Positions 24,454 through 58,426 of a stretch of DNA of 64,000 nucleotides are shown in pieces. Within the stretch, counting starts at the first letter, position 1, and each line of letters opens with the position of its first letter. Below the pieces are notes generated by a model. It made no database searches, was not told the DNA's origin, and was given only the letters and a program-made list of their open reading frames with translations. The DNA is from Tubulanus polymorphus (taxonomy: Eukaryota > Animalia > Nemertea), in NCBI RefSeq assembly GCF_964204645.1, contig NC_134030.1, positions 1,595,355 through 1,659,354 on the forward strand, in the 5' to 3' direction. A program made the position numbers and the translations under genes.

Positions 24454-24490
<37 letters not shown>

Positions 24491-24537: not shown

Positions 24538-24579
<42 letters not shown>

Positions 24580-25521: not shown

Positions 25522-25642
25522 CTAGAAATTAAAAAATAATATAAATATATTAGTCAATTTCATTAAAGTTTAAATTTTCAACATTTTTATTGTAACGTTC
25601 ATTAGTTAATAAATTAGCATGAAGCGATGAATTTGTACTCAC

Positions 25643-26135
25643 AGGTGCATATGGACTTGATGTAGAGGGACCCCCTTGTCCGCTGGGTGCCTTTTTGGTG
25701 GCTTTTGACATCTAAAAACATTAGTTATAATATATAATGATATGAAAATATATCATATATCGAGCCAGTCAAACAGTTCAGTACTTTCTAACAACTATTC
25801 TTAATCATGAATAAATTGAAAATATATCATATATCGAGCCAGTCAAACAGTTCAGTACTTTCTTACAAATATTCTTAATCATGAATAAATTAGCATGGAA
25901 ACAGTAAATTTGTACTAACAGTAGGATACGGGCTTGATGTTGAGGGCCCGCACCCCACGTTTTTTTCACTGCTTTCGGCATTATCTAGAAAAATAAGTAA
26001 AACTATAAAATCATTTGAAAATAAATTATATATCAGATTGTGGTAATCATGGTAATCCTGGTATGAATAAATTAGCATGGACGCAGTAAATTTGTACTAG
26101 CACCATCGTTTGTACTGGACGTGAGGGTGCCCTCG
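25643..26135 (-). repeat. Exon-1-like cassettes (intact 69-nt MSKATKKAPSGQGGPSTSSPYAP at 25643-25711, plus two degenerate copies)
   Basis: ttttag|atg...|gtgagt; duplicate of 23399-23845. Confidence 0.75.
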
Positions 26136-26591
26136 CTCATTGAAATTCCCTTTTGTTTACCATTTACCATGAGGTAACATTTCAGATGGAGCCACTTTGA
26201 CTATAATAAACGGTTGTAGTTCTACTGTTCACTGCTTCAGGTTTTCTATTGCAATATGTCACTATTGAACAAGAAACAAGAAATCAATCGAAGTTTGTCC
26301 GAACTGGTTTTTCAGTTTTTCTCCACTCGTCTATAACGGGCTATCAATCAATATGGTCGAATGTGCAGAATGTTCCAGCTGATAAAAACTGGGTTCCAAA
26401 ATAATCAGCCCTTTGCATGTGATGATGCGAACGATCTGCCTGGGTGCACCCTGGTATAGATTTGACGATGCAGTAATGTATGACGGACATTACCTGTCAG
26501 TAGCAGAAGCAGGGTTTAATATTCTATATATATAAATTTCGGTTTCAAGCTCAAGAATGATGACTTCAAACAGGCGTTTACGATAACTTAC

Positions 26592-26721
26592 ATCTATTCC
26601 GGACATAGAAATATTGAACCGTTGTTGTTGTTGTTGTTGTTGTTGTTCGGTTCTTTTTGCATACGGGCTCGATGTACTTGGACCCGCGCCCTGTGTTTTT
26701 TTTCATTGCTTTAGGCATAAT
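26592..26721 (-). pseudogene. Fused exon 1+2 paralogue with a +1 frameshift in an A-run
   Basis: MPKAMKK/TQGAGPSTSSPYAKRTE-polyQ-RFNISMSGID followed by gtaagt; 130 nt. Confidence 0.7.
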
Positions 26722-26849
26722 CTAGAAAAACGAGTAAAAATATTAAATCGATTTAGGCGTTAATCCTTTTTGTGAAACTGGACCCAGGGGTACAAAATAC
26801 TAAGTATGGGATGAATAAATAAGCATGGAAGCAGTAAATTTGTACTTAC

Positions 26850-26912
26850 TTTATTATACGGGCTCGATGTTGAGGGCCCCGCGCCCCGGGTTTTCTTTGT
26901 GGCTTTTGGCAT
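26850..26912 (-). CDS. Exon 1 paralogue MPKATKKTRGAGPSTSSPYNK
   Basis: ttttctag|ATG, 63 nt, gtaagt; same peptide as 45259-45321 with two synonymous changes. Confidence 0.75.
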
Positions 26913-26979
26913 CTAGAAAAACAAGTAAAAATATTAAATCATTTGAAAATATATCAGTCAGTCTTATTCTGGTTCAGTG

Positions 26980-27265
26980 AACTAATTCTTTATATGGTGC
27001 ATGTAGGGGTCCAGGGACACCACATCCACTAATTCTCTATATGGTGCATGTAGGGGTCCAGGGACACCACATCCACTAATTCTCTATATGGTGCATGTAG
27101 GGGTCCAGGAACACCACATCCACTAATTCTCTATATGGTGCATGTAGGGGTCCAGGGACACCACATCCACTAATTCTCTATATGGTGCATGTAGGGGTCC
27201 AGGGACACCACATCCACTAATTCTCTATATGGTGCATGTAGGGGTCCAGGGACACCACAACCACT
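26980..27265 (-). repeat. 47-bp minisatellite, ~6 copies
   Basis: Same unit as 22683-22910 and inverse of 44707-45190. Confidence 0.95.
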
Positions 27266-27457
27266 TAGTTGTTGGGCCCAGGCGCTTTCACCCTTCTTGC
27301 TGAAAATCAACTGATATCCTGAATTCTGACTAATTACAGATTGAAAACTGTAATTCACAAGTGCATAATCAATGATTTCAATCCAAATAAGATTTTCTTA
27401 GCTACAGTTTAAATCATCTTAGTTTAATGAAATATGAAAACAAATAAAGATTCTTAC

Positions 27458-27687
27458 CTCCGTCAGATCTCCTTCAAACACCCGCCCACGGACTCTTTCT
27501 GACCATCTTTTGGCACCCGGGGGCGGCTGTCTGACAGGCCGCTGCTGAGGCGAATTTATTGGGCGTGGGGGAGGGGCAGCAGCGGGCGACAAAGGATTAA
27601 GCGGTGGTGGTATCCTATCGGGAACCAAGTTTCTTTTAAACTCCCTCACCAAGTCCCCAAATGGGCAGTCGTCTAAAATGTTGATCA
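27458..27687 (-). CDS. Intact exon 8 paralogue, 230 nt
   Basis: Same length and splice sites as 56676-56905; INILDDCPFGDLVREFKRNLVPDRIPPP...RVRGRVFEGDLTE. Confidence 0.75.
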
Positions 27688-28411
27688 CTGTAAAATAAAA
27701 ATAGAGAGAAATACATTAAACAACAAGTCGAATGGTTTTGATGCTACGGCTATGAATATTATTCCAACAGGGGGCGCCTGATGTTACTGAAGTATGATTT
27801 CAATGTAACTTCAGTAATTGAAATTATTTTTATTCAGCAGTTAAATTGTACAATTATTCGTTATCTATGATTTCCTGATGAGATTTACTGTTTGAGCATC
27901 CAGAGATTCCAAACTTTGTCGTTTAACCAATAATTGGTTTAACGATATCACACGGCACCTGCTGAACTCTTTGTTACGTGTATCAGTCTTATATATGTAT
28001 TTATTACTTATATTTGTGTAAGGATTGTGTGACGTGACAGTGAATAATTAGCATAATTAATGCAAACTGGATTTCGTCTACGGACGGATGAAAAGTGAAC
28101 GCAATAACTATAGTCCCAAGTGAGATAAAAAAAATTAATAAGTTTGAACTTGAAATAGATATCGCTGTCGTGCTGGATTGGTGAAAAAACCTGTAAAAAT
28201 AAAATAAAACAAATTATTAGATGGATATTCATGAATGGAAATGACAACTGTAGAGATAGCATCATTGATATATTACTTCTACGATGATGATACTTAATCG
28301 AATTTGAATTTATTCCTAATTAGCGTAATTTATGCAAAACAGCTACTACCCTCTATTTTCAAATTACAAATTGAAATAAGCGTGATTTATTAGAAAAAAG
28401 TTATCACTTAC

Positions 28412-28860
28412 CGGCGTAGTAGGCGGTAAACTGGTGGCAGTGGCGGTAAACCGCTGGACGGCGTTGTCGGCAAAAACTGAAAATACAATCGAAGACAATG
28501 TTAAAATCCTGATCTGATTTGTATAGTGTAAGTGAATGGTTTTGGGGTTCGGACCGTCTGCCCACACGAGAACACCCGACCCTCGCGCTACTGCTGCATT
28601 TGACTGCTCGGTGCGTCTGAGGAGCCTTGATGGACACTTACCGGCGTAGTAGGCGATAAACCGGTGTCGAAACCCCGCTGGGCGGCGTTGTCGGCAAAAA
28701 CTGAAAATACAATCAAAGACAATGTTAAAAACCTGATCTGATTTGTATAGTGTAAGTAAATGGTTTTGGGGTTCGGACCGTCTGCCCACACGAGAACACC
28801 CTACCCTCGCGCTACTGCTGCATTTGACTGCTCGGTGCATCTGAGGAGCCTTGATGGACA
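28412..28860 (-). repeat. Tandem duplication (~225 bp) carrying two exon-3-like cassettes (28412-28476, 28642-28700)
   Basis: attttcag|tttttgccgacaacgcc...ccg|gtaagt; lengths of 65 and 59 nt are not frame-preserving. Confidence 0.75.
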
Positions 28861-29378
28861 GAACACACCATTGATGGAATAATGGTTAATCAGTCTAACC
28901 TCGTTAAAACTCTGTAAATGTGAGTTAAACTCATTGAAATTCCCTTTTGTTTACCATGAGGTAACATTTCAGATGGAGCCACTTTGACTGTAATAAACGG
29001 TTGTAGTTCTACTGTTCACTGCTTCACGTTTTCTATTGCAATATGTCACTATTGAACAAGAAACAAGAAATCAATCGAAGTTTGTCCGAACTGGTTTTTC
29101 AGTTTTTCTCCACTCGTCTATAACGGGCTATCAATCAATATGGTCGAATGTGCAGAATGTTCCAGCTGATAAAAACTGGGTTCCAAAATAATCAGCCCTT
29201 TGCATGTGATGATGCGAACGATCTGCCTGGGTGCACCCTGGTATAGATTTGACGATGCAGTAATGTATGACGGACATTACCTGTCAGTAGCAGAAGCAGG
29301 GTTTAATATTCTATATATATAAATTTCGGTTTCAAGCTCAAGAATGATGACTTCAAACAGGTGTTTACGATAACTTAC

Positions 29379-29507
29379 GTCAATTCCGGACATAGAAATA
29401 TCAAACCGCCGTTGATGTTGCTGTTGTTGTTGTTGTTGTGTTCTATTAGCGTAAGGGCTTGACGTTGAGGGGCCCGCGCCCGGGGTTTTTCTGATAGCTT
29501 TTGGCAT
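29379..29507 (-). CDS. Fused exon 1+2 paralogue, 43 aa
   Basis: MPKAIRKTPGAGPSTSSPYANRTQQQQQQQHQRRFDISMSGID followed by gtaagt, open frame. Confidence 0.7.
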
Positions 29508-29839
29508 AATTCGTAATGTGGATGGGCTTGCGTCCCATGTTTTTTGTTTGCTTTTAGCATACTTGAATGGTTAATGCTTAACATCTCTCCCAGATTGTAT
29601 TGGCTTGAAACCTTCCTTATTGGTATCTAGAAAAATATGTATAACTATTTAATCATTTGAAAATACATTTTATGATTAGTCAGTCATACAGTTCAGTACT
29701 TTCTTACACTTATTCTTAAGCATAGTATGAATAAATTAGCATGAAAAGAGTAAATTTGTAGTTACCAGCATACGGGCTGGGAGTAGAGGGGCCGGCGCCC
29801 CACATTTTTTCATGGCTTTCGGCATTGTTTTCTTTGTTT

Positions 29840-30045
29840 GTGGCAGCAACTATGGGTCGGTCTGTCTTGAGTTTGTTGGTTGTTGCAGCAGCTGGGTCAG
29901 TCTTGAGTTTGTTGGTTGTTGCAGCAGCTGGGTCAGTCTTGAGTTTGTTGGTTGTTTCAGCAGCAGCAGCTATGGGTCAGTCTTGAGTTTGTTGGTTGTT
30001 TCAGCAGCAGCAGCTATGGGTCAGTCTTGAGTTTGTTGGTTGTCT
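29840..30045. repeat. 33-40 bp minisatellite, ~5 copies
   Basis: gggtcagtcttgagtttgttggttgtt..cagcagct. Confidence 0.9.
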
Positions 30046-30505
30046 TGATTTTTTTCTTCAGGAATTCAAGAACAAAGTAGTTGCATGTAGGTAGACACAT
30101 TCATGAATCACTCAGTGTCTTCCTGTCCCACCATAACTTCCTTGATCCTCATTACTCGGATTTATTCTCTGAACCACTTTTCCATGTTTGTTGTGGTTTG
30201 TTTGTTTTGATTTGCTGGTGGTTTAAGCATGCATGTAGAGGGAGCTCTATCAATCCAGGAACAGTCAGCTCACAAGCAGCCCCTGCCCCAAAAGGTTTTG
30301 ACATATTTTCAAAAGCTCTAGTTGTTCTGTAGAACCGAGAGCGGAGCTCTGACTTGTTCCCCTTACTGCTGAGGTCTACTTTCTCTGATTCGCTGATTGG
30401 CTTCTCTTTGGTACATTTTAGATGATCAAAAACTAGAAACTGTCATGCGTTTATTCATTTTGGTATATGTTAAAATTCTTTTACAGTAAAGGCATATTAG
30501 GCACA

Positions 30506-30853
30506 TCAAAACAAACCCGGAATTGTCCCCGAACGAAGTGGCTCCCTCCACTCTCCATCAGTATGCCGGGCCACCACCTCTACCTCTCGGGCCACTCGAT
30601 CCCTCGCCAGCTTTTTAGCGAGTGAACGAGTGACCGCCCGAGATAAGGATGGAGGAGCAGGACCCGCACCTGCCCCAGCCCCATCACCATCCCTCCTCGG
30701 CCTCTTCCTATTAATTCTTACCCCTTCCTCCTGATTGCCTTGATCAGCTGCACCATCCGCAGGGGCAACTCTTGCCTCCCCTCCCTGAGGAGCCACGACG
30801 ACCGCAACTTTTCTTTTCCTTTTAGTTCTTGTTTTTTTTGGCGGTGGTCGTGT
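30506..30853 (-). CDS. Exon 9 paralogue (TRPPPKKTRTKRKRKVAVVVAPQGG...RSGTIPGLF*)
   Basis: ctctttacag acceptor; 348 nt open frame; homologous to 58034-58426. Confidence 0.7.
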   Translation of the reverse strand, partial: TRPPPKKTRTKRKRKVAVVVAPQGGEARVAPADGAADQGNQEEGVRINRKRPRRDGDGAGAGAGPAPPSLSRAVTRSLAKKLARDRVAREVEVVARHTDGEWREPLRSGTIPGLF

Positions 30854-31181
30854 CTGTAAAGAGAAAAAATGAACAATAAGTATTTAGTATAATACACCTA
30901 TGTGCGTATAATACACCTATGTGAGTCCTTCGCTATTAAACACATAGAACTGTGGAACTGGATCCCGAGGCTAATCTAAATGCGCGCAATTGAGTCCAAG
31001 TGCAACTAAAGCACACAACTGCGGATCAGATAAATCATTGGTAGATTCACTTGTAAAATATCTCGCTAAGAACAAACTAAAAACTGTAGAATGTTGTTGA
31101 AACTGTTGTGTGTTATTCATTTGGGTATATGTTATATTTGAATTTTTTTCAGTGAAGGCATATTAGGTGCACATAAACGTC

Positions 31182-31554
31182 TCATGCGTTCAAGGCATAT
31201 CCCTTCACTGAAAGAATATTCTTTAGATCAGTTAACAAATCCGGAATTGGCCCCGAACGAAGTGGCTCCCTCCACTCTCCATCAGTATGCCGGGCCACCA
31301 CCTCTACCTCTCGGGCCACTCGATCACTCGCCAGCTTTTTGACGAGTGACCGCCCGAGATACGGATGGAGGAGCAGGAGGAGCAGGACCCGCACCATCCC
31401 CAGCCCCACCACCATCCCTCCTCGGCCGCTTCCTATTTATCCCCTCCCCTTCCTCCCGATTACCTTCGTCAGCCGCACCATCCGCCGGGACCACTCTTGC
31501 TCCTCCTCCCTGCGGAGCCACGACAACCGCAACTGGTACTTTTCGGTTTCTCAT
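31182..31554 (-). pseudogene. Exon 9 paralogue with a frameshift
   Basis: Homology splits between ORFs 31324-31554 and 31182-31415 at a small deletion near SRAVTR. Confidence 0.75.
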
Positions 31555-33525: not shown

Positions 33526-36500
33526 AGTTTACTTCAGATAACGTAATTTGGTTTAATCACAAGTCGTCAACATTATAATCAATGTAACTACAGTGACTAC
33601 ATTATTGTCCTTTTATTGAGAAATTTATGTTAATTTTTGATTTCTGGGAAAAATCAAAATTCAAATGTTATCATTTTTTGTATCAAAAATTGTAAAAAAT
33701 TGAATAATTTGTGTGCTATTGAAACATTCAGTTATGGGGAGTTTTAAGCTCAGAAAACTTTGAGCCTGTTTATACAAGTGTTGTAACAAGTGTTGAACAA
33801 TTCAAAGATCATGTTTTTTATACTTTGTCATGTTAGAAAAAATGTTTTCTAGTATATTGATGTTTCTAAAAAAACATATGATTCAACTTTAAAAGGCCAA
33901 CAAGCCTTCTAATAAAACTAGTTTGTCATATATATATATATTACTTGGTCATTGTCAAGTTTTTTAAAAAATATTTTGGTTTTCTCAGCTTTCTCTGGTG
34001 GAAATTTCTTCGTGGAATTCCTCTTCTATACAAGTTCCTCCTCAGACTGTTTTTATGCGAGAGTTTATAACAACCGGATCCTCAGAAAATGGTCGGAGTG
34101 CCAAGTCTTCGATTTAAGATCACCAGTCTTATCTGAGACCATAAGTTCACTAGCAAGTTTCACTAGCGATTCCAACAGCTATAGGATGGAACAGTATTAT
34201 TATATAGGTCACCACTGTGCAATTGAGCCCAGATCATCAGAAAAAGATAAAAGTGAAGATATGTGATGGGATTCATTGAAAATTTTGCATATATAATTAA
34301 TTCATTGAACTACTTAATTTGTATGATTTATTTTTTGGGAATTTTCGAATTTGTCATCAATAACTAGTATATATTTCTTTTCAAGTTGTGAGCGATCTAG
34401 TTCTCTGTCGACCCATTGAAAATGAATCGACTCTGAACTGTAGAACTGGACCCAGGGAGCTGAATCTCGCGTGCCACAGCAAGATACAGAGCTCTTCAAT
34501 GTCTTAACCGTCAGGTGCTGCCCCTAAACAAATCAATTGCGGTAAATCTGTGAACTAACTTATAGCTCGCTTGCCAGAGTAGAATCATAGCGAGCTGTCT
34601 AAAATCTTGAACCGTCTAGTGCTGCCCCTTAATCGATATGTATCGGAAAAGTGAATTTATTACTCGCATGCCACAGTAGTTGAGTAGTTGGAACATCATG
34701 ATAGACTCGTTTTTCTGTGCAGCTATAACGGGAACTATTTCAGATCTGATAATGAATATAAACTCAGTCACAGTTCGATAACAAACGCCGCTGGGTGAAA
34801 TTGATGTAAACAAATAATCGTGTTGAAATTGAATTTAGTTTAAGATATATTTTCGTGGTAGTTTTTATTTTCAAGCTGTTTACGTTCACTTCAAATGATG
34901 AAACGATGAAACCATATTAAATACATCCCTGTTTTAGTGGGGATTTTGAGTTTTGGTCCTTTCCGTATCTTCTAGAAACATCAAGTAGAAAGGCATTAAC
35001 TGAACCCTATGTCTTTAACTTCAGGAGTCTATATGGAGTTTTCGGATGCCTCTTTTCCTCACTTCTTGCATTCGTCACTATTAGAAATCCGGACAAACTG
35101 AATTCAGTTCGACGAGGCCGAAGAACAGAAGACCAAAGAGTGATCTGCACTAGCCGCAGGGTTCGTGTTGGCTTGGATCGGTGGGAGGCAATCAAACCCC
35201 GACACGTGAAGATGTATCCTCAAAAATGGATACCGGAACGCTTCTCTGGTTTACGATGATTAGTCTGCAGGGATAACTCTTTGGCGGGGCGTGATCGCGT
35301 GAATAGCCCAAACTAAACCTTCAGAGTTCACTGTACTACAGCATACAACATCTGATAACTTGCATAATAAAGCGCGGCGTGCATGAAAAGAATTGTATAA
35401 ATGCGGGCAAGATTCCGTGCCCTGGCAATCGAACGCCGGAGTGGAGGTATTCCATACACTGGTAGGTGAGTCGGAGTAGACTGGTTGCTTGTCCCATAGA
35501 GACCGGTAACCAGTCTAGCCACCTCACGATCAGTCTACATTGAAAAACCATTACTGAAATATGGTTGACGGAAATATTCATTTTATATCAGATTCTGAAA
35601 TATTTTCTCGTATTGACTACAAAATTTTTATTATCTTAATAAGATAAATCTGCCAAAGCTCAACAATTTGAATTAGTGAAAACCGATGTGCGAAGTCGTC
35701 AATTCAGAAGCCCGATAGAGCCCGGTAACCAGTCTAACTGTCAATGTTCATTGCGCGGGAATGAACGGGCAACCAGTCTACGATGAAAAATCATTTCTGA
35801 AAAATTATGAACGGAGATATTCATTTTACTTTGAATTTTGAATTATCTTATAAAACTGACAGCCATATTAACCAAAGTATTAATAGTAAATCTGATAAAA
35901 TCTAATACCGGTTTTAGAATAGGTGAAAACTGATTTATGTGAAGCCGTCGGTTCAGAAGACTGATCCGTAGAATCGTTCGCCACTTTCTTCCGGTCCACT
36001 TACTTCCGCGTTTGTGATTTGCATACAAGTAGTTTGAATGTTAAATGTATTAAGCCGCGTGTTGATTGGTTGAGGTCAGTGCGGTTTACTGAACGATGAC
36101 CAGCTGTCAGCTGATCGAATCATTCGTTTCACAGACATTACGACGTAAGTATATTTTACATCTTTGATCAAAAATTGTAGTGTAAAAAAACTCCAAACTA
36201 AGGCCTCTATAAATGATCGATTGACTTTAAATGATTACTTTAGCACAGCTCTTGTAGACAATGATTAGGTGTCATAGTAGTTTAGCTCGAAAGTGCACAT
36301 ATAAGGTTAATTTTCATCCCTTATTTAGAGACCGAGGTATTGAGCGTCCATTTCAGCCCTTAAAACATCATCAACCTACCTCAAACTGACTGTTTTTAAA
36401 TCCAGCAATAGTTAACTATTGACTCATCATGGATTCGATTCAAAAACAATTTTTGATGATCGTAGTGAGTCGAAACGTTTGAATTTTTGAAAAACACGAA

Positions 36501-45258: not shown

Positions 45259-48200
45259 ATGCCAAAAGCCACAAAGAAAACCCGGGGCGCGGGGCCCTCA
45301 ACATCTAGCCCCTATAATAAAGTAAGTACAAATTTACTGCTTCCATGCTTATTTATTCATACTTAGTATTTTGTACCCCTGGGTCCAGTTTCACAAAAAG
45401 GATAAACGCCTTAATCGATTTAAGATAAACTGAATTAATGAAGAAATTAAATCGATTTAAGAGTTAAACCTGTTTGTGAAACTAGGCCCTGAATTGCATC
45501 TAGAATGAAAAAAAAGAAAAAAAAATATTGAATATAACGTTGGTGAAATATTTCTGGATCTTTCTGGATTTCTGCTCAATGCATCGTTTAGTAAAATATC
45601 GATATTCTCTAAAAGTAAAGATATAAGAATAAAAATATTGTATTGAATCGTGATTAGTTACTGTATGCGCTGCTAGTTGTTGCCCAACCCATAGCCTCAT
45701 TTCTCTCCATTCTAAATTTGCATTGTTTAACATTGTCTGGTCGCTATGGAAACTATTTATTTAAGTTTCTTTGTTGTATCCATGGCAACAGTAACGTTTA
45801 GGTAGTGGCACCAATTATGGGTCCCAACGTTCCCATGGCGATACATGAGAACATTTATCCTATTTTTGACCTTCATGACGTAAGATGGTAGTGAGTCGAT
45901 GACGTCATTTTCGTCTCACCACTAATGAAAAAAAAAATGAAATGAAAAAAAAGGAAAAAATCGTTAGAATTACGTTTATGAAATTTTTCTGGATCGGCTA
46001 AATGTATTGTTCCATTAAATATCGACATTCTCTAAAATTATAGGCATCAATATCAAAATGATGATACAGCAGACTCCGCTTAACTCTGTTCTATTTGGAC
46101 CATTAATTAACCGAATACCAACTTTTTAAAATTTTAGGATTTTAACTTTAAGGATCAGAAAATGTGTATGCAATTTCAACCGGGTACCGAGTAGGGTGGC
46201 CGAGTCTACTGTAGTCTGCTGCCCCCTCGAATCCATTACCTTATTATCTCTCAATTTGCATTGTTTGACCTCGTCTGGTTGCTATGGAAACTATTTAGTT
46301 ATATCAGGAACGGTTTTTTCGAGGTAACCAGTGGCAACATTTAACAGGCGTGTCCGTCCTAGAGATAAACTGTCTGATTTCACAGCCACATCCGTCCTGG
46401 AGATAAACTGTTAGATAAACTCTGATTTCGCGTCTGTCCTATTTCTTGTCATTGTATGAATATGTTTTCTCTTTTATAGGGTACAGCGCAGCAACAACAA
46501 CAACAACAACAACAACAGCAACAGCAACAACAACAACAAAAATTTAATATTTCTATGTCGGGAATAGACGTAAGTTATCGTAAACGCCTGTTTGAAGTCA
46601 TCATTCTTGAGCTTGAAACCGAAATTTATATTATAGAATATTAAACCCTGCTTCTGCTACTGACAGGTAATGTCCGTCATACATTACTGCATCGTCAAAT
46701 CTATACCAGGGTGCACCCAGGCAGATCGTTCGCATCATCACATGCAAAGGGCTGATTATTTTGGAACCCAGTTTTTATCAGCTGGAACATTCTGCACATT
46801 CGACCATATTGATTGATAGCCCGTTATAGACGAGTGGAGAAAAACTGAAAAACCAGTTCGGAAAAACTTCGATTGATTTCACTCACATTTACAGAAATTT
46901 GGTCCGACCCCAAAACCATTTACTTACACTATACAAATCAGATCAGGTTTTTAACATTGTCCTTGATTGTATTTTCAGTTTTTGCCGACAACGCCACCGA
47001 GTGGTGTACCGCCTTCTACACCGGTAAGTGATAACTATTTTCTAATAAATCACGCTTATTTCAATCTGTAATTTGAAAATAGAGGGTAGTAGCTGTTATG
47101 TATAAATTATGCTAATTAGGAATAAATTCAAATTCGATTAAGTCTCATCATCGTAGAAGTCATATATTAATGATGCTAAAGTTGTCATTTAAATTAAGTG
47201 TTATATTTACTACTTCATTTGCTTCATGACCCAAAAACCTCTACTATATAACTACTGGTTTTGTTCTAATCTTGGAGAATTTGCTGCAAAATTTACTTAT
47301 CATTTGTTAAACAGTTTTTATTGAAAACCTGAATCAGTGATACATGCATTCATGAATATCCATCTAATATTTTGTTTTATTTTATCTTTACAGGATTTAT
47401 CACCGATACAGCACGTGGACGTAAGAGATTAAACATTGATCTTGAATTTTAAGTTCAAACTAATTTATTTTTTATCTCACTCGGGACTATAGTTATTGCG
47501 TTCACTTTGCGTCCAGTTGTCTCGGCTAGTTTTTGATTTATCGTGTTGATAATTGGTTTATATACTCAAACTCAAAATATCGGCGCAATTGGAATTAAGA
47601 TGGCGCACTTGTATGTCCATTTTTTTCCCCGGCAAAATTAGCACTTTAGCAGATTTTAAGGATCAATTCTGTTGTTATATTACATTGAAATCAGAGTTTA
47701 ATATATATCGGTATAGAGCAGATTTTTGCTCTAGTTATAAATAAAGTTATAAATAATCTCATGACATGTTCTGTATATGTGTAGTGAGTTTCAATGTCTT
47801 TGGTTCCTTTTAAACCAGGGGGAGTTAAATTTGAAAATGTCAGATCGTCGAGCATTTCAGACCGCTTCCAAAGTGGGTCCCTGCACCCCTAGTTATACCG
47901 TTAATATTTTAATAATATATTGATATACCATACATTGATATCAGTCTTGTAATTGGATCAACAACCATGAGATCAAAACACAGCAAATATGAACCTGCTG
48001 TGAATCAATAGATTTGTGATAAATGTAATGAAATTGTTATTTTTCATATTGACTTTTTGAGTTAAGGGTCTGTTGTATAAGAGTATTTGGTATCGCGTGT
48101 CAATGTATGATATCAATCTGTATTTCCTCGTTCCAATGTTTAAAAGGTGTTCGTCACCTTATATTAATAAACTACTTTTACCGTTAGATGGCGCCATAAG

Positions 48201-49540
48201 TGTGATATTTGATTTATGGGATACCCGCAAAACCAGCTATTCCACCAGATGGCGCAACGAGTAGTAGGTCGTTCGTTGTCAAAATTAGTTCATTTTCGAT
48301 GAACTTTGAACTGGTTTGAAGAAGAAATACTTTCATTCTTCTACTCTGATATCGATTTAGTTTTCATTAATAATTGATTCATTTAAGAGAACAATTCATT
48401 CAGATTTAATTGAAATGTACAAGAAAATCGAACGCAGACGACCAACTATTTACTAGCGACACCTGGTGGATCCTCGCCTGCCATAAGTGGAATCCTCGAT
48501 TGCCACAGTAAGACTGCGGGTATCCCATTGTTTGGCGTGTGAATTAAAGTAAAGTTAGAAAACGGATGTTTAACTTTGTTGTGAAACGAAAGCGTTTTGG
48601 AGATTTTTAAACCAATCAAATCAATATTTTGATATTACGCTTGAAACCCTTCCCACTCATATTCTACTTACTAAGTATATATTCTTGTTTCCGTGGAAAT
48701 CATGGTGAGTGGCGCCATCTATACAGTGGAGTTAGCTTTATAAATCGAGCATGATTCGACAAGTGGCTCCATCTATTCCCTAATACTGAAGCGAGGTAAC
48801 CAGCAGCGCCCTCATATACAGGAAATGAACGCCTATCAAGTTTAACAATGCACGGTGTATTGACCACAGCGACCGGTGATAATTATATCAATGTTGATTA
48901 GCTATTGCCATAGACAGGTCCGTAGCGTTTGACTGGACCAGAACGGGGCCCCCTAACCAAAACAAATTTTGAAAACGTGCCCAGATAAATTGCCTCTGGG
49001 AGATTGATTTAACGAGGTTTTGATTAAATGAACAAATTTTAATATTTGTAAGTTTAACATTTCTGTTTTTAATTTTTCTTTGCGAGGAACTGAATTTTCG
49101 AACCCCCCCGAACCGCCTCAAGCTACGTTCCTGATATAGTGCTAGCTATACCTGAATACTTTTCTCTTATTGAAATTGTCTAAAAAACCAGCACCTTGAA
49201 CTAATGAACGTCATAATGAAAATGTTTAAAAATTCAACCATTAATGAATTTGACTAATGTATTTTTTTTATTTTCATTTCTAGCATCAGTTTGCCTCAGA
49301 GGCAAGGTCGCCGTCGCTTAATGTAAGTATCAGTGACGCCCTCAATCTCACATGCCTCACTTCCCTCCTAATGTAACCATTTTTATGAAATTCCTCAAGA
49401 AAATATATACTAGTAATCTTAGAATACACGTTTTTGTACCCAGACCCCTTCATTCTACTGAACTACCGTGTAATAAGTGCCTGTTGTGTTTATTTTCTGT
49501 TGCATTGATTTATATATTATTTCTATTTACAGTTGTCAAA

Positions 49541-49571
<31 letters not shown>

Positions 49572-52500
49572 GCACCCCTCCCGCCGGAGACGCCTCCCGA
49601 CTTGCAAGCAAGAAGTAAGTTCAGTCTTCAAATACAATTTCAATGCATTCAATTTTGTGTATGGCATTAAAACGGTTAAAGTTGTGACTAGTTTTCATAA
49701 CTCCGTGACGTCATATTTCCATCGAGTACCGGACCCTTTCCTATGTTTTTTGCCAATTTGGATTGAATGATCGCCAGCGGTTTTTCTATACGACCCGGCT
49801 CTGCTGTATTGCATTTAGCCATCCTTTTTCTTGGCGTTTTTTATAAGAAGGTGTTTGATTTTGTCTCTAAGGGATTTAGGAATTTAAGAGACACTTGTAC
49901 TCTCTATACAGTGAGTTTGTTCTGTTTTTGTTCCCTCGTGAATTTTATTTTTGTTTGGTTTAATTTGATTTATCATAATCAAATCAAATCAGTGCATATT
50001 TCTTGAATTGCGTGTAAGTTATAATGTTATCAAATATCTGTTATATTTAAACCGAATATTTAATTGTTGTATTTTGAATGCGATAATGCCGCTCCCTGCT
50101 AAAGTCCAGCGTCGTCATCGTGAGGGATGCGGTCATCTGTTCGGGCCCTGATTACGTTCTGTGTTCATCCTGTTGGGCTACATCGGGCGTTATATGAGTT
50201 CATCCTTCCTCGACTTGCGGATTGTGGTCGGAAGATCTATGGGTTCGGGCCGATAAGTCCCGGAAACAGAAAGTACAGTTTCTGCCGATGTGCCTATTGA
50301 TGTCTCTATTTCAGAACATCACAGCGGTCGCCGGCTGTACAAGCACGGCCGGCTTCCCAACTCCATTCTCTGAGGAGGATCGCTGGTTCTCTAGTAACGG
50401 TCAGTCACCAGTCAATCAACGGTTCAGCTGGTTCAGTTTCCCAGGTATCGGCGCGCGACAGTCGGGATACCTGCACAGGAACTCAGGTCCGGTCCGGGCT
50501 ACTCCGAGCACCGGTCCGGTCCAGGCATCACCGGATACTGAACATCCTGTCCGGTAGCTTCGAGAACTGGTCCGGTCCAGGCATCACAGGGTACTGAACA
50601 TCTGGTCTAGTCAGCTTCGAGAACCGGTCCAGGCATCACCGGATACTGAACATCTGGTCCGGTCAGCTTCGAGAACTGGTCCGGTCCAGGCATCACCGGG
50701 TAATAAACATCCGGTGCACGGGTACTGAACATCTGGTCCGGGAGCTTCGAGAGTCCGGTCCGGTCCAGGCATCACTGGGTACTGAACATCCAGTCTGGTC
50801 CAGTCCAGGCATCACCGGGTACTGAACATCCAGTCTGGTCCGGTCCAGGCATCACCGGGTACTGAACATCCAGTCCGGTCTGGTCCAGGCATCACCGGAT
50901 ACTGAACATCCGGTCCGGTAGCTTCGACAACTGGTCCGGTCCAGGCATCACCGGGTACTGAAAATCCAGTCCGGTCCGGTCCAGGCATCAGTGGATACTG
51001 AACATCTGGTCCGGTAGCTTCGAGAACTGGTCCGGTCCAGGCATCACTGGGTACTGAACATCCAGTCCGGTCCGGTCCAGGCATCACTGGGTACTGAACA
51101 TCCAGTCTGGTCCGGTCCAGGCATCAGTGGATACTGAACATCCTGTCCGGTCAGCTCCGTGCACCGGTCCGGTCCAGGCATCACTGGGTACTGAACATCC
51201 ACTCTGGTCCGGTCCAGGCATCACCGGGTACTGAACAGGGTTCGTCGCGGTGCTTGAAAAGCTTGAAATGGCTTGAATTTGAAAAATACTACTCAAGCGC
51301 TTGAAAACAGCTTGAAAATAGATCGAAAGCTTGAAATAATTATTTTTGACTTGAAATAAAAAGTTATGGCTTGAAATGCTTGATTATCACAAATTTTCTT
51401 CATCGCGAATTTTTTTCGATGAAATCGCAGACAGAATATGTTCTTGAGTTGTTTGTACGCGTGCGTCATGTTTTAGGCATCAATAAAGAAATTAATTGAA
51501 TTGTATTGAATCGCTATGAGACTCTTGTGGTGAAACTCTACGGTGTCTGGAGACATGAACATACGGGGAAATTTCAGTCATGCATGTTATCGAGCATTGA
51601 TGTAAAATGGCATTGAAATCCCACACCAGGAGTGAGAGCCATGTTGAAGGCACCGCGACCTAGTCAAAGTCATTGAACATTACAAATTTCGTATTAGGCC
51701 ATCCAAAAATCAAGGTCTGTTTGCCGTCATCCGACCGACCCGACTTCAAAGGTACCCAGTGGAAACTTTTTTCTTGGATTCATTGAAATAAATTGTATTT
51801 TTGATACAAATGGCCGACCCACTGCCGATGTATGAGCTATGTATGTTTGAAGTTAAGTGTGCATCATGTGAAAACATGCCTCGACTATTTAGTTGAAGTT
51901 TTCCAGGAAACTGGCAGTGTTCCAATAAGCTGCCATTCATTCTAAAGCTGGTAATGTTATAGCGTGCATATATTCAATCTACTGTTTCATTTTGAACGCA
52001 GATTTCGGATGTTGTTTCCGCTAAAAGTGGTGATGATAAATTTGTTGTTTTTTTGCCCCAAAATTTTGCAAAAAAAAAATGATGCTACCTTCCTACTGAC
52101 TTATCCCAAAAATAGTAGGTGTAACGGCAAAACAGACAATTAATTTGGGATGGCCAAATATCCAAATCTTGATTGATATGAATATTTAAGCTAGGAAATG
52201 CTGAAAATCATTGTGATGAACAGGTTTCATCTCTAACAGAATCGTATCAACTCGGAGGTTCCACTGGAATCAAAATTTTACCTCTTTTTTAACATTTTTA
52301 TACGAACCTGTTCAAAATAGGCAAATTGGCTGCGACTAACGAAAATTGCTTCCAACGTGCCTTAAAAAATAGCTTGAAAATGGTATAAATCTAGCTTGAA
52401 ATGGCTTGAATTTCACCTGAGCTTGAGACAATGAACCCTGCTGAACATCTGGTCCGGTCAGCTTCAAGCACCGGTCCGGTCCAGGCATCACCGGTTACTG

Positions 52501-55500
52501 AACATCCGGTCCGGTCAGCTTCCAGCACCGGTCCAGGCATCACCAGGTACTGAACATCTGGTCTGGTCCGGGCGGCCTGGCATCAATGTTTCGAATTTAA
52601 AACATAGTTATCATGGTTCTAGGTTTGGTAGAGGGCGCTCTTCTACCAGATGCAGGAGCGAGGTCACCTTCACGGAGATCGAGATCGAGGGATTATGATT
52701 GATTCTGTAGGAACCATCATCATTCATCAGTTCAGGTCGAGGGACCGTTTAGGAAGTTCACGTCTTTCACGTCGAGGGACCGTTTAGGAAGTTCACGTCT
52801 TTCACGTCGAGGGACCGTTTAGGAAGTTCACGTCTTTCACGTCGAGGGACCGTTTAGGAAGTTCACGTCTTTCACGTCGAGGGACCGTTTAGGAAGTTCA
52901 CGTCTTTCACGTCGAGGGACCGTTTAGGAAGTTCACATCTTTCACGTCGAGGGACCGTTTAGGAAGTTCACGTCTTTCACGTCGAGGGACCGTTTAGGAA
53001 GTTCACGTCTTTCACGTCGAGGGACCGTTAAGGAAGTCGTCACAATAATCAGGATTTCCGCGATTTCGAAAGTCAGATTTTAAACTTGTTATTGTCATTG
53101 TAAGCTACCGCAGTTACAGGTAAGCCTATTCTTGATTGCCCGAGACAGGCGTGCAGATATTGTTCCCGACTTAAGTTTTTGGTTGATTTTCTTGTGACTT
53201 GTTTGTTTTAGGGGTGAGATGGATGAGCCTTATTGTTTTTTGACATATATAGGTCATCCAAGATGGCCGCCACAGCCATTACAATGTGTAAAATAGCCAT
53301 TTTGAAGCTTGTGACAACTCTACAATCTACAGTTTCAAACCAATTTACCAATTACTTATTCTGTGGTTTCATAATGGTAGGAGAATGAGCCTTATTGTTT
53401 TTGACATATATAGGTCATCCAAGATGGCCGCCACAGCCATTTCAATGTGTGAAATAGCCATTTTGAAGCTTGTTACCGCTCTACGGACTTAAGTTTTAAG
53501 CTTAAGACTTAAGATGGCCACCACAGTTATATCAATGTCTTAAATCTTATCCGATTTGGAGCTTGTTACTGCTCTAAGATGTAGAGGTTTAGAGGTTTAT
53601 AATTTCATTCATACTTGTACTGTGGTTTATTTATGGTGGTCAGAGGATGAGCCCTATTACAATTTGCATTCTCTACTTGACTCACTGGTCAAGGGTTAAT
53701 ATCTAGTTTGATAAATGTGGAGCATGTCGGTGAATCATCCCCCCCCTCCCCCGGACTCTGATCTCAATGTCTGATGTCAATCGTCAGCAGTTTCAATGGA
53801 ATAGGCTCGATTAGGTGTGGAACAAGTGGAATCCTCGATTGCCACAGTCGAACCTAGAGTATTAAGAGCTCAATTAGGTTCTTCTTTGCGTCTCTTCTCC
53901 AGTTGGAGTGCTCCAGTTTCCACCGAATGGAGGAAGATTCGAGATGTGCAGATTCAAGTCCACCATGCGGACTCCGGCTCCGGCTCCGGCAGCTCAAGGT
54001 TCAGCCCGAACTCACGCAATGCCATCTCAAGCATCCGTACTTTCTCAAGCGGCTACTAATGCTGTTTGGAGAACAAGTGCACAGCTCCAACATTCTCGTG
54101 CCCCTTCTGGTCAGAATAATTCTAGTTCATATCGGGGAATGCTCCTAAAAGGAGCTCTTCCTCTCGGAGAAACTCAAAATGAATGCTCGGGGCCAGTGAG
54201 AGGTTGTCTATAACGAGCAGCCACCTACTGATCCGGCGTTCCCGGGTCGTATCACGGCGGCTACTGTCTTCAATTCTGAACACCTCCCGACATGCGCCCG
54301 AAAGCAGGTCACGAGACACTAATCTCGTTAGCTCTCAAAGATCTGGCCAAAAAGAGAGCAATAGAACCAGTACGGGACGAAGCCACATCTGGCTGGTTTT
54401 CATGAATATTTATGCTCCTGAAGACCACAGGGCGTCGATGGACTGTCATTCCTCGAGTGGCACCTGGATATCCCGAGGCTTCCGATGACTAAAACAGGGA
54501 GGTAATTCAAGGTCTCCGTCGAGGTTAATGGGCGGCTTCATTGGACCTGAAAGATGTCAGGTTCCTATTCACCCGAAATCTCATCAATTTCACAGAATGA
54601 AGTGGAAACGCCGCCAGTTCCAGTTCAGGTCTCTTCCAGTCGGCCTCAGTACAGCCCACGCCCTGGGTATTTACCAGCTTGGGTCAAGTCCAGAAGGTAC
54701 ACTACAGTCCAGGGCTGGGTTTCATAGATATGGAAGAAAAATAATTCCAGGGAACATTTTGAAATTTGTCAGTTATAACCATGGTTTCTCATTGTTAGTA
54801 TGGTGGTTGAGGATTTATCCCTTTGGATAACTTTGATACTCAGTCTATGAAACCGGGTCCTGGAGTATTTGTCTGTTGGTTTACCTCGACGACTGGTTAC
54901 TAGTACCAAACTCGACTATAGAATGTCAGGAGGCGGTGACCGCTGTCGACCGCTGTCGTAGACTTAGTTCACCAGTTCCGCGTAAACTAAGTAAAATCTC
55001 ACTTGATGCCGTCCCAACAGTTCACATCTCCGGATCAGCACGGTCTTTCCGTCCATGGCTCGAGTAGCCAAACTTCAAGAAGCGTAGTTACCACAAACGA
55101 GAGGACAGCTAGTTATCGGTGACGCCTGTGGCTAAATGCAATACCGCAGTGCCAGGGGTCGTATCTCTGGCTATCTACACATTCAGAGAATATTAACTAA
55201 AACCATAGGAAAGGGTCAAGCACTACTCCGAAAAAAAACTAATTTTATTTCCAAAAAATTACGATATTATATGGATTGCATGCTGTGTGGAAGAAGTTTT
55301 CAAAATTATTTAGGAGCTTATTATAATTTGAATACATGAATTGAGAGCAATTTGAAATGTGTTGATATCCGAAAGTGTTTCCATTGACTTCACTCATTCA
55401 CCTGATGAAGCTTCTATACATTAGTACCCAAAGCTTGTGTGTCAAATAAACTAGTTACACGTCCTATAAAGTACTACTTGTCTCGTTATATATTCTAAAC

Positions 55501-58426
55501 CCCAGTTAACAATTCCAGTAAGTCAGGTTTAGGGAATAGATATTTAAACCTTCAGATGAAACCGATGTGATACAATTCCAGTAAGTCAGGTTTAGGGAAT
55601 AGATATTTAAACCTTCAGATGATACCGATGTGATACAATTCCAGTAAGTCAGGTTTAGGGAATAGATATTTAAACCTTCAGATGAAACCGATGTCATACA
55701 ATTCCAGTAAGTCAGGTTTAGGGAATAGTTATTTAAACATTCAGATGAAACCGATGTAATACAATTCCAGTAAGTCAGGTTTAGGGAATAGATATTTAAA
55801 CCTTCAGATGATACCGATGTCATACAATTCCAGTAAGTCAGGTTTGATATTTAAACCTTGAGATGATACCGATGAATTTAGCAATTTTGAATGAATTAAA
55901 CCAATATGAGATTTCGATCCTAAGAATATTGGAAGCTTGTGTTTAACGTTACTAAATAGTAATATTATATAAAGCTAGAAGGACACGAGCGTATCCATTT
56001 TTTTGCCCGATCGCGACGATTAAATTCGCTGGTGAATTTATACGCCCGATACGAGTGGGTACCGATCTATTTATAAATCGGCCATCACGGTGATTTCGTC
56101 GCCCGCCGACATTAAACATGTTCGATATTTACGCCGGTGTTCAGGTCACTTGTTAATTCGCTCGTCTTGTCGGCAAGCTTAAAAAGATTTAGAAAAAACT
56201 ACAAATTCTCATTCCTGAATGAACTGGATTCATCTGGGTTCAGTTTCATGAGACTCAGTTCAAACTGCTCTAGAATTTGAGTTTGTAATTAATGTATGTG
56301 ATTATAATGAATTGTATTTTTTGTTTTACAGCTTTGGCATTTCGGTTAAGTCGTGCGTTCCGGCGGGAGGAGTTTGTACGTTTGTTTCTCCCGGAGTGTA
56401 AGTAGTTTAACTATTTTCATACAATATCATTTAGTGTGACGTATGTCACTGATAATCAAAATCTAATAATAACTGTTGATCCGTAGTATTAACATTGTGC
56501 AATTGAAATCCTATAGTTGTTTTTAGAAAGGATAGATGGCGCCATCAATGTGACAATCGATTGTAAAGTTTAAGAAATGAATGTTTAACCTCGCCGAGTA
56601 CCAGAATTCTTAACCGTAGCATCGAAACCATTCGACTTGTTGTTTAATGTATTTCTCTCTATTTTTATTTTACAGTGATGATCATTTTACAAGACTGCCC
56701 GTTTGGGGACTTGGTGGGGGAATTCAAAAGAAACTTGGTTCCCGATAGGATACCACCACCGGTTAATCCTATGTCGCCCGCTGCTGCCCCTCCCCAAAAT
56801 CCGATAAATTCGCCTCAGCAGCGGCCTGTCAGACAGCCGCCCCCGGCCGCCACTCGTTCATCAGACAGAGTCCGGGGACGGCTGTTTGAAGGAGATCTGA
56901 CGGAGGTAAGAATCTTTATTTGTTTTCATATTTTATTCAGGATATCAGTTGAAGTTCAGCAAATAAATTACCAGACCTGTAAACAGAAGAGTAGTCATAA
57001 ATTTCCATTTGCGGGTAAAACCCCATAGTCGAAAACCTTCGGTTATTGATCTATATCTGCTTAAGACCAATGGTTGTACACACGAGTGCGAAAACTTATC
57101 GCTCAAACTTTGATTGTATCCATGGTAACGCGTACAGTATACTATGCGTGACTTACCGTTTCCTATCACTGGAATACAATACTGTTTTAGACCATGAGCG
57201 CCATCTGCGGCGGTCATAACGGACTGAGTGGTGATTGGCTGAAATGCTCGTCTACCGTGGTGACGATTATTCGGTGTTACACGTGCAGCAGACACGTCTC
57301 TGAATATCTAACATTTGATTGTTGTAACTCATCGGGAAAAATATGTTTATGAGTCGATTTTTTGTCGAAATTTTGTTCGGCAGAAAATTGGCTGCGTACG
57401 TCAAGAAGGCGGCTGATATTTGTATCGTGTGACCCCTCGTCCCGGTAATATGCCGACCCACGTACACCTGAGACCAGTTGCAGAGCTTAGAATTAAGACC
57501 GTTTTAAGACCAACTTAGTTCTATAGCCAATCTAATAACTTAAGACCAGTCTTTAGATTTAAGACCACTTTTGGACTTAAGTCTTGACCATGGAATCGGC
57601 CCCAGATGCTTATTCCGCTGTATTGGATGCTGACGTGCTCGTGTCTTCCAGCAATGTTGTTATTCACCAAAAATATCATGTTTTGTTTGAATAACACGAT
57701 TCATCTGAGTCTGGGTTTAACGGATGACACGTTCACACAGAACTACGAAATCAATATCAGAAGTCCTTTTATATTGAAACGGTCCCAGAAGTCCCTGTTA
57801 TAATGGGTACTTTTTCAAAAAAAGTAACGAGAACTCCGATGGCTTTCCGTATCGGTAAAAACTAACTATTTCTATGAGCGTCACTCGTAGATTTACCGAA
57901 ACGCCACCTTGTGACACGATATCCTAACTACGTATAGGTGTTTTATTTGCTGAATCGCTGGTTTCTCATTCTCATTTTTTATACTTGTGTTTAATTTTAT
58001 ACTAAACAAATTTTTCACTTTTTCTTTTTACAGACACGACCACCGCCAAAAAAAACTAGAACAAAAAGGAAAAGAAAAGTTGCGGTCGTCGTGGCTCCGC
58101 AGGGAGGAGGAGCAAGAGTGGTCCCGGCGGATGGTGCGGCTGACGAAGGTAATCGGGAGGAAGGGGAGGGGATAAATAGGAAGCGGCCGAGGAGGGATGG
58201 TGGTGGGGCTGGGGATGGTGCGGGTCCTGCTCCTCCTGCTCCTCCATCCGTATCTCGGGCGGTCACTCGTTCACTCGCCAAAAAGCTGGCGAGTGAACGA
58301 GTGGCCCGAGAGGTAGAGGTGGTGGCCCGACATACGGATGGAATGTGGGAGGAGCGGCTTCGTTCGGGGACAATTCCGGATTTGTTAACTGATTTAAAAA
58401 ATATTCTTTCAGTGAAGGGATATTAG
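45259..58426 (+). CDS. Predicted 9-exon gene, 344-aa disordered and probably nuclear protein of unknown family; exons 45259-45321, 46480-46569, 46979-47023, 47394-47420, 49284-49322, 49533-49614, 56332-56397, 56676-56905, 58034-58426
   Basis: Each exon has a pyrimidine tract + AG; the eight donors read GTAAG; lengths 63, 90, 45, 27, 39, 82, 66, 230, 393 sum to 1035 nt; phases match at every junction with no internal stop. Confidence 0.72.
45379..45491. mobile_element. MITE, possibly PIF/Harbinger-like (CWG-flanked)
   Basis: ctgggtccagtttcacaaa ... tttgtgaaactaggccctg. Confidence 0.6.
46067..46211. mobile_element. Tc1/mariner-pogo-like MITE with TA TSD
   Basis: ta|cagcagactc ... gagtctactg|ta. 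Confidence 0.65.
48241..48470. mobile_element. MITE-like element with ~31-bp imperfect TIRs
   Basis: tccaccagatggcgcaacgagtagtaggtcgt vs inverse of acgaccaactatttactagcgacacctggtgga. Confidence 0.55.
51236..52440. mobile_element. Non-autonomous DNA transposon, 8-bp TIR, 5-bp TSD
   Basis: ctgaa|cagggttc ... gaaccctg|ctgaa; subterminal gcttgaaa motifs at both ends. Confidence 0.85.
51697..52155. mobile_element. Nested MITE with GGCC termini (possibly Zator- or Harbinger-like)
   Basis: ggccatccaaaaatcaaggtctgtttgccgt vs inverse of acggcaaaacagacaattaatttgggatggcc. Confidence 0.7.
52736..53038 (+). repeat. 35-bp minisatellite, ~8.5 copies, gag-derived
   Basis: gtcgagggaccgtttaggaagttcacgtctttcac; compare tcgagggaccg at ~39453. 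Confidence 0.95.
53146..53730. repeat. Inserted interspersed repeat with internal ~180 bp repeats
   Basis: gagcc.ttattgtttttgacatatataggtcatccaagatggccgccacagccatt twice, plus a third partial copy; interrupts gag homology. Confidence 0.65.
54710..54862. mobile_element. MITE inserted in the decayed RT
   Basis: cagggctgggtttcataga ... tctatgaaaccgggtcctg; RT homology resumes on both sides. Confidence 0.65.
55508..55875. repeat. 63-bp minisatellite, ~6 copies
   Basis: caattccagtaagtcaggtttagggaatagatatttaaaccttcagatga.accgatgt.ata. Confidence 0.95.

What the first reader, a model, noticed from the sequence alone, without database searches (positions are those of the whole stretch)
45259..58426. 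Hidden 9-exon micro-exon gene encoding a 344-aa protein of no recognisable family
Seen: nine GT-AG segments join in frame: MPKATKKTRGAGPSTSSPYNK | GTA-Q17-KFNISMSGID | FLPTTPPSGVPPSTP | DLSPIQHVD | HQFASEARSPSLN | LSNN-S9-APLPPETPPDLQAR | TLAFRLSRAFRREEFVRLFLPE | LMIILQDCPFGDLVGEFKRNLVPDRIPPP...RLFEGDLTE | TRPPPKKTRTKRKRK...LKNILSVKGY*. The first five exons are 27-90 nt and all phase 0-0, so each can be skipped without a frameshift. The exon 7 paralogue at 21442-21510 differs at several synonymous codons (ttg/ctt, gca/gct, cgg/aga, ttg/tta, ctc/cta). Inference: a real, lineage-specific, mostly disordered protein with one short helical core in exons 7-8.
Basis: partly seen in the sequence, partly recalled or inferred. 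Interest (0 to 1): 0.85.

Follow-up and report, generated by a model that had tools for sequence, protein, structure and literature searches.

The report
Amplified orphan gene with recycled exons
This looks like a real animal gene for a floppy, probably nuclear protein with no known relatives; it is one of about 30 near-identical copies whose small exons differ far more than their introns, and broken copies next door lack individual introns exactly, which suggests RNA was copied back into the DNA.

Summary
The nine AG/GT exons are there as described and give an open 344-codon frame. It is not a lone hidden gene. About 28 full-length copies with 98-100% identical non-coding flanks sit in tandem arrays on C6, C3 and C8, with several older C8 copies and about 10 distant relatives on C8/C9/C11. 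No homologue turned up outside this genome. Coding status is supported by intact frames in 6 of 6 copies, length changes only in multiples of three, and pN/pS 0.26. No RNA run holds the gene, so expression and exon skipping are untested. Exons 1, 3 and 7 differ at 15-35% of silent sites against 1.2% in flanks. Inverted broken copies carry intron-less junctions: exons 1/2 and 5/6 strongly, 0/1 and 6/7 on 10-11 bases. These support four junctions and point to RNA-templated conversion. The scan noted this family and pattern before on other DNA (s1-518588, s1-518631, s1-492727).

The parts
36043..36144 (+). Probable non-coding exon 0 (5' end not mapped; donor GTAAGT at 36145)
   Evidence: Present at 98-100% upstream of 28 young copies; in older C8 copies the match stops at about the donor. 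Its last 10 nt match 9/10 and 8/10 directly before ATG cassettes 29507 and 22246, which lack an acceptor.
45259..45321 (+). Exon 1: ATG, basic N-terminus; most variable exon
   Evidence: pS 0.35, pN 0.057 among six intact copies; 15 haplotypes
46480..46569 (+). Exon 2, phase 0-0, poly-Q (17-21 Q among copies)
46979..47023 (+). Exon 3, phase 0-0, Pro/Ser/Thr-rich; 45 or 39 nt
   Evidence: pS 0.33, pN 0
47394..47420 (+). Exon 4, phase 0-0, 27 nt
   Evidence: invariant in six copies
49284..49322 (+). Exon 5, phase 0-0, 39 nt
49533..49614 (+). Exon 6, phase 0-1, poly-S and Pro-rich
56332..56397 (+). Exon 7, phase 1-1, hydrophobic/amphipathic-looking segment
   Evidence: 43% hydrophobic; pS 0.15
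56676..56905 (+). Exon 8, phase 1-0; first 45 nt variable, then Pro-rich linker
58034..58426 (+). Exon 9: two basic NLS-like clusters, Gly/Ala/Pro linker, conserved helical last 67 aa, stop
21005..31544 (-). Inverted block of scrambled, mostly broken pieces of the same gene, including 14 exon-1-like cassettes; one of about 9 such blocks
29379..29507 (-). Exon 1 + exon 2 fused without intron 1, preceded by an exon-0-like end, followed by intron 2 (98/99 identical)
26592..26721 (-). Second exon 1 + exon 2 fusion (frameshifted), followed by intron 2 (99/99 identical)
25407..25521 (-). Exon 5 + exon 6 fused without intron 5, between an exon-5 acceptor and the intron-6 donor
21442..21518 (-).

Best explanation
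A real spliced gene of probably ten exons (non-coding exon 0 plus nine coding exons), one member of a lineage-restricted family recently amplified into tandem arrays of 31-45-kb units. SHOWN: exon anatomy, copy number, purifying selection, absence of outside homologues. INFERRED, protein: non-secreted and nuclear (no signal peptide; KKTRTKRKRK and NRKRPRR clusters; eight S/T-P sites), a disordered scaffold carrying two small ordered modules (exon 7/start of exon 8, and the last 67 aa). It most likely binds chromatin or a chromatin factor, with dosage raised by amplification; I put about 0.7 on nuclear, 0.4 on chromatin-associated and 0.25 on a germline-conflict role. INFERRED, evolution: unequal exchange and gene conversion keep the units about 99% alike, while short old variant patches are moved into the small exons. 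At least some of these transfers used spliced RNA as template (localized retroprocessing), which removed single introns exactly in the inverted fragment blocks. The blocks act as a store that exchanges patches with intact copies.
For: Six of six inspected copies keep all AG/GT sites and an open frame, and every length difference is a multiple of three. Overall pN/pS is 0.26; pS is 0.35, 0.33 and 0.15 in exons 1, 3 and 7 against flank divergence 0.012. In five older C8 copies, about 45 amino-acid differences fall in the first 63 aa of exon 9 against about 3 in the last 67 (counts derived from rounded identities). Variation starts at the splice site: 16/45 variable sites inside exon 8 against 1/45 in the intron before it; 9/45 against 0/45 at the exon 7 donor. 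Exon 1 is mosaic: 94 of 210 site pairs fail the four-gamete test, and four codons use all four third bases. Cassette C6:1049916 has exons 1+2 fused, coding parts 83-90% alike to the intact gene, but 546/555 upstream bases identical and 293 bases exact downstream. All 16 contiguous exon 1+2 matches lie in inverted blocks; no intact intron-less parent was found. The 5' part of the 21442-21518 piece matches an older C8 copy starting exactly at the exon 7 boundary. Alleles of intact copies occur in the blocks with 13-nt context 41/84 times against 3/162 for control bases; the count includes majority alleles.
Against: No RNA evidence: all holder runs laid are DNA and the one possible RNA run has no exon. 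No donor gene for the exon 1 variants was found; older C8 copies give no exon 1 hit. Junctions 2/3, 3/4, 4/5, 7/8 and 8/9 have no intron-less counterpart. Junctions 0/1 and 6/7 rest on 10-11 nt matches. pN/pS is about 1 in exons 8 and 9 among young copies, on very few changes. Four-gamete failures can also come from repeated mutation at saturated sites. The direction of exchange is not shown. Structure models are low-confidence (pLDDT 57-62). The function rests on motifs only.
Confidence: 0.5

Rival explanations
1. Opsin-like case at DNA level only: conversion keeps homogenising introns while selection retains old exon variants; the intron-less pieces are old accidents unrelated to present variation.
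For: Same outward pattern as gibbon L/M opsins, where exons diverge more than introns (PMC3213168). Some amino-acid variants exist in exons 1, 7 and 8. An earlier agent favoured this reading (s1-518588).
Against: Most differences are silent (exon 3: pN 0, pS 0.33), so there is little for selection to hold. Haplotypes look mosaic, not like a few old lineages. Frameshifted cassettes show the same pattern. Three or four introns are lost exactly, two of them with flanks 97-100% identical to the intact gene.
Confidence: 0.27
2. A selfish amplified germline gene and its suppressor: the inverted fragment blocks yield antisense or hairpin small RNAs, and silent recoding of exons helps copies escape them.
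For: Amplification, basic nuclear product and neighbouring inverted fragments recall Drosophila Dox and its hairpin suppressors Nmy/Tmy (PMC10292708). Several short units also carry an inverted exon 9 and exon 1 piece about 10 kb downstream of the gene.
Against: No small-RNA or expression data. Exon 9, the longest target and well represented in the blocks, is nearly invariant among intact copies (3/393 sites). The inverted arms are far apart.
Confidence: 0.12
3. A schistosome-MEG-like gene that diversifies its protein by skipping symmetric micro-exons.
For: Exons 2-5 are phase 0-0 and 27-90 nt; exon 7 is 1-1.
Against: No signal peptide. Micro-exons 2-5 give only 67 of 344 aa. All donors are strong GTAAG sites. 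The intron-less pieces join neighbouring exons, none skips one among the adjacent pairs tested (skipped junctions were not searched).
Confidence: 0.07
4. A silent array or an assembly artefact.
For: No RNA support; near-identical copies; run X4 has holes over some intact-type introns.
Against: Copies differ in structured ways. pN/pS 0.26. DNA runs X1 and X3 cover all 30 bins; in X1, intact-intron contigs have depth about 680-750 against 140-190 for block-specific joints, roughly the assembled 28:6-7 ratio, though the tool warns depth is not copy number.
Confidence: 0.04

Closest known systems
Schistosoma mansoni micro-exon genes (MEGs; bioRxiv 10.1101/2023.06.21.545858)
   Same: Lineage-specific orphan family; short exons mostly a multiple of three; long introns; hard for automatic annotation.
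   Different: MEGs have 10-20 exons of 6-81 nt (mostly 15) and a signal peptide. Here there are five or six small coding exons plus exons of 230 and 393 nt, no signal peptide, NLS-like clusters, and no shown skipping.
Primate L/M opsin array (PMC3213168)
   Same: Tandem paralogues whose exons differ more than their conversion-homogenised introns.
   Different: Two genes with a known selected difference and no fragment store. Here about 30 copies, mostly silent mosaic patches of tens of bases, and exact single-intron losses.
Localized retroprocessing (plant mitochondria, PMC4987113)
   Same: Part of a gene replaced by a reverse-transcribed spliced copy, so single introns vanish while neighbours stay.
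   Different: Described for organellar genes within one locus. Here it is inferred for a nuclear animal array, with templates 10-25% diverged from the recipient.
Silent-cassette conversion systems: Borrelia vls/vlsE, chicken immunoglobulin pseudo-V genes (own knowledge, not checked here)
   Same: An intact gene with a block of variant partial copies upstream, inverted in vls, and short mosaic tracts.
   Different: Those diversify surface or antibody proteins in a programmed way. Here the product looks nuclear, variation is mainly silent, and nothing shows a programmed or somatic process.
Drosophila simulans Dox family with hairpin-RNA suppressors Nmy/Tmy (PMC10292708)
   Same: Young amplified genes for basic nuclear proteins with related inverted fragments.
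   Different: No protamine or HMG homology, no sex linkage, drive or small RNA shown.
The 42-exon micro-exon family of this genome (scan notes s1-492671, s1-492727)
   Same: About 10 distant copies on C8/C9/C11 share exon 8 (51%) and the end of exon 9 (45%); the count fits the '10-11 copies plus about 40 relatives' in those notes.
   Different: Nine coding exons here against about 42. That these are the same loci is inferred from counts; I could not read them.

Membership tests
Schistosome MEG | Most of the coding sequence in 10-20 very short exons (6-81 nt) | tested here: not met
   Exons 8 and 9 give 623 of 1035 nt (definition)
Schistosome MEG | Short exons mostly a multiple of three | tested here: met
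   Exons 1-5 and 7 are; exon 6 (82 nt) is not
Schistosome MEG | N-terminal signal peptide | tested here: not met
   Exon 1 is 10% hydrophobic, net charge +5; judged from composition, no predictor run
Schistosome MEG | Isoforms by exon skipping | not testable with these tools
   No RNA run holds the gene
Opsin-type intron homogenisation | Silent exon divergence above intron divergence | tested here: met
   pS 0.15-0.35 in exons 1, 3, 7 against 0.012
Opsin-type intron homogenisation | A few stable exon lineages held by selected amino-acid differences | tested here: inconclusive
   Haplotypes look mosaic and mostly silent, but only 6 of about 28 intact copies were read in full
Localized retroprocessing | Exact loss of single introns with neighbouring introns kept | tested here: met
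   Exons 1/2 and 5/6 fused at offset 0 with the next intron kept; 6/7 and 0/1 on short matches
Localized retroprocessing | No intron-less genomic parent that explains the loss | tested here: inconclusive
   None found, but DNA searches score only 40 candidates and older C8 copies were not read
Silent-cassette conversion system (vls-like) | One-way, programmed transfer from cassettes to an expressed locus | not testable with these tools
   Alleles are shared; direction, timing and expression unknown
Dox/hairpin-RNA conflict system | Small RNAs from the inverted fragments; germline expression; drive | not testable with these tools
   No RNA data
IL-33/LANA-type acidic-patch binder | MXLRSG motif (PMC8750818) | tested here: not met
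   Exon 9 has ERLRSG, with the Met five residues before the Leu; only the LRSG core matches
Any catalogued protein family | Significant profile or sequence match | tested here: not met
   Exon by exon. Full-length relatives over about 230 aa were visible only to the exon 8 search

The most novel reading that the evidence does not exclude
An ongoing RNA-templated system in an animal germline: spliced transcripts of diverged family members are reverse-transcribed and written back, exon by exon, into an amplified gene array and its inverted cassette blocks, recoding exons while leaving introns untouched. Similar 'old exon, young intron' patterns noted in other families of this genome would then share one lineage-wide mechanism.
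Probability: 0.15. Interest if true: 0.85.

Novelty: new variant of a known kind. Interest (0 to 1): 0.48.

Why it matters
An amplified orphan gene for a disordered protein is common and of modest interest. The unusual part is its evolution: silent sites near saturation inside tiny exons, flanks about 99% identical, and neighbouring fragments with single introns removed exactly. cDNA-mediated intron loss is usually inferred from comparisons between species; here possible recipients, intermediates and templates lie in one genome, so the model could be tested directly. The intron-less pieces also give junction support for a gene that has no RNA data.

Tried and rejected
1. Pfam on six exons: only a sub-threshold DUF6508 hit. 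2. Homologue searches with exon 9, exon 8 and exon 9 residues 64-130: nothing. 3. The one hit among 1.84 billion proteins, P0001 (E 5.8e-4), is a three-fold repeated ORF with no related context; rejected as chance. 4. ESM Atlas: no usable hit. 5. Fold searches not run, since both models are low-confidence. 6. RNA check: X4 held 27% of the words, close to the exonic share, but proved to be DNA. Its holes over intact-type introns were not interpreted, because the tool filters records. 7. The first exon-versus-flank test showed no difference because 150-nt flanks ran into a polymorphic insertion in intron 7; redone with 60-nt flanks. 8. The loose protein-level junction scan gives many weak chance or repeat hits; only exon 1/2 and 5/6 score strongly. 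A possible exon 3/4 fusion at 28700 is as well explained by an internal duplication of exon 3; not counted. 9. Phylum markers (cellulose synthase, insect cuticle motif) gave no match and are inconclusive; the name Tubulanus polymorphus comes only from earlier scan notes. 10. The bacterial promoter scan is not relevant to an animal gene. 11.

Full report
Observation. The nine segments are at 45259-45321, 46480-46569, 46979-47023, 47394-47420, 49284-49322, 49533-49614, 56332-56397, 56676-56905 and 58034-58426. Each has a T-rich AG acceptor, each of the first eight ends in GTAAG, and phase arithmetic gives 1035 nt, 344 codons and a stop, with intron phases 0,0,0,0,0,1,1,0. Exons 2-5 are 0-0 and exon 7 is 1-1; exon 1 carries the ATG and cannot be skipped harmlessly.

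Copy number. The window is C6:1595355-1659354 of a 268-Mb genome. Exon 8 has 79 matches and exon 9 has 113. Thirty-four places hold an intact end of exon 9 at 99-100%, and 28 hold the upstream exon-0 region at 98-100% (18 on C6, 9 on C3, 1 on C8). On C6 the copies lie 31-35 kb apart where the unit is short, within 1.8 Mb of one end of a 23-Mb contig. Older copies lie on C8 at 15.0-16.3 Mb, and about ten distant ones on C8, C9 and C11 match exon 8 at 51% and the end of exon 9 at 45%. Earlier notes name the animal as the ribbon worm Tubulanus polymorphus and describe a 42-exon family of 10-11 copies with about 40 relatives. The counts fit, but I tested neither claim.

Is it coding? I read five further copies in full (C6 1.06-1.21 Mb). 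All keep every splice site and an open frame, with totals of 1026-1044 nt and every length change a multiple of three. Mean pairwise pN/pS is 0.26. In the older C8 copies, about 45 amino-acid differences fall in the first 63 residues of exon 9 and about 3 in the last 67 (derived from rounded identities). That segment is also the one shared with the distant subfamily and the one predicted as four helices, at low confidence. All 28 cassettes with three non-acceptor bases before the ATG have A at -3, as expected for a start codon. RNA support is absent: no holder run is on record as RNA, X1, X3 and X4 cover introns and show no splice joints among the rows listed, and X5 has no exon.

A tenth exon. 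Exon 1 has an acceptor right before its ATG. A donor at 36145 ends a stretch found upstream of all 28 young copies; in older C8 copies the similarity stops at about that donor. Two exon-1 cassettes without an acceptor are preceded by 9/10 and 8/10 matches to its last ten bases. I read it as a non-coding exon 0; its start is unmapped.

Homologues and protein anatomy. Pfam, the 5.8-billion and 1.84-billion protein collections and the ESM Atlas gave nothing credible; length limits mean only the exon 8 search could see full-length relatives. The protein is rich in Pro, Arg, Ser, Ala, Gln and Gly, has no signal peptide, eight S/T-P sites within exons and two basic clusters in exon 9. An LRSG near the end resembles, but does not meet, the MXLRSG nucleosome-binding motif of IL-33. 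A nuclear location is a fair inference; chromatin binding is a guess.

The unusual part: old exons, young flanks. Among six intact copies, 60-nt flanks differ by 1.2%, but silent sites differ by 35% in exon 1, 33% in exon 3 and 15% in exon 7. The change begins at the splice site: 16 of the first 45 bases of exon 8 vary against 1 of 45 in the intron before, and 9 against 0 at the exon 7 donor. Fifteen exon-1 haplotypes use all four third bases at four codons, and 94 of 210 informative site pairs fail the four-gamete test, which points to fine-scale mosaicism, although saturation can mimic it.

The inverted block. Upstream and on the other strand (21005-31544) lies a scrambled set of gene pieces with 14 exon-1-like cassettes; about nine such blocks exist. 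Aligning exon ends separately shows junctions with no intron: exon 1/2 in at least three variants, exon 5/6 at 25480, exon 6/7 at 21508 and exon 0/1. The clearest case, C6:1049916, has 546/555 identical bases upstream, 293 exact bases downstream, a coding part only 83-90% alike, and the 1158-nt intron 1 missing exactly. All 16 contiguous exon 1+2 matches in the genome lie in such blocks. These pieces give support, independent of my splice-site reading, for four of nine junctions, two strongly and two on 10-11 bases. Junctions 2/3, 3/4, 4/5, 7/8 and 8/9 rest on splice signals and frame only.

Mechanism. Best reading (0.5): arrays are homogenised by ordinary exchange, and short old patches enter the exons by conversion, at least partly from reverse-transcribed spliced RNA, as in localized retroprocessing (PMC4987113). 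The main gap is that no donor gene for the exon-1 variants was found. Main rival (0.27): DNA-level intron homogenisation with selection on exons, as in gibbon opsins (PMC3213168); it explains the contrast but not well the mainly silent mosaics or the exact intron losses. Lesser rivals: a Dox/hairpin-RNA-like conflict (0.12; PMC10292708), MEG-like skipping (0.07) and a silent or mis-assembled array (0.04).

Verdict. What this follow-up adds is the probable exon 0, the conserved C-terminal module, and measured intron-less junctions with young flanks. Novelty: new variant of a known kind. Interest 0.48; 0.85 if an ongoing RNA-templated system is shown (probability about 0.15).

Noticed in passing
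window 38299-44397 (+): DIRS1-like retrotransposon inside a 19-bp satellite, within the probable intron 0: inverted terminal repeats, an internal complementary region near 44107-44204, and three open ORFs (756, 723, 975 aa) with RT/RNase H and an HxxR...W...Y recombinase-like end. Looks intact.
   Followed up: partly
window 49710-55257 (+): Decayed relative of the same element in intron 6 (71% over 941 nt), with 40-57-bp and 35-bp tandem repeats and a further insert at about 51237-52440. Intron 6 is also long (7-9 kb) in five other copies.
   Followed up: partly
intron 7, window 56398-56675: Intron 7 is dimorphic among copies: 278 nt here, about 1.75 kb in four of five copies read.
   Followed up: no
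window 24435-24729 (-): Exon 6-like piece amplified as 3.5 tandem units of 83-86 nt inside the inverted block.
   Followed up: no
window 44705-45190, 26981-27265, 22683-22910: A 47-bp minisatellite sits just upstream of exon 1 in the gene and of two exon-1 cassettes in the block.
   Followed up: no
window 32489-33524 (+): 91-bp satellite whose units each carry a T-rich AG and a GTAAGT 34-36 nt later, mimicking a run of micro-exons.
   Followed up: no
run X4 on window 45195-50000: X4 shows mostly block-type variants and zero depth in 6 of 30 bins of intact-type intron, while X1 and X3 cover all bins. May be the tool's filter or a real copy difference between samples.
   Followed up: no
G000:C8:15155183-15172302 and 15074390-15076167: Local tandem repeats of partial exon 9 (about 2.7-kb unit) and of partial exon 8 among the older C8 copies.
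   Followed up: no
window 48254-48575 and 45385-45489: Very high depth in DNA runs and palindromic structure: small high-copy repeats (MITE-like) in introns 4 and 1.
   Followed up: no
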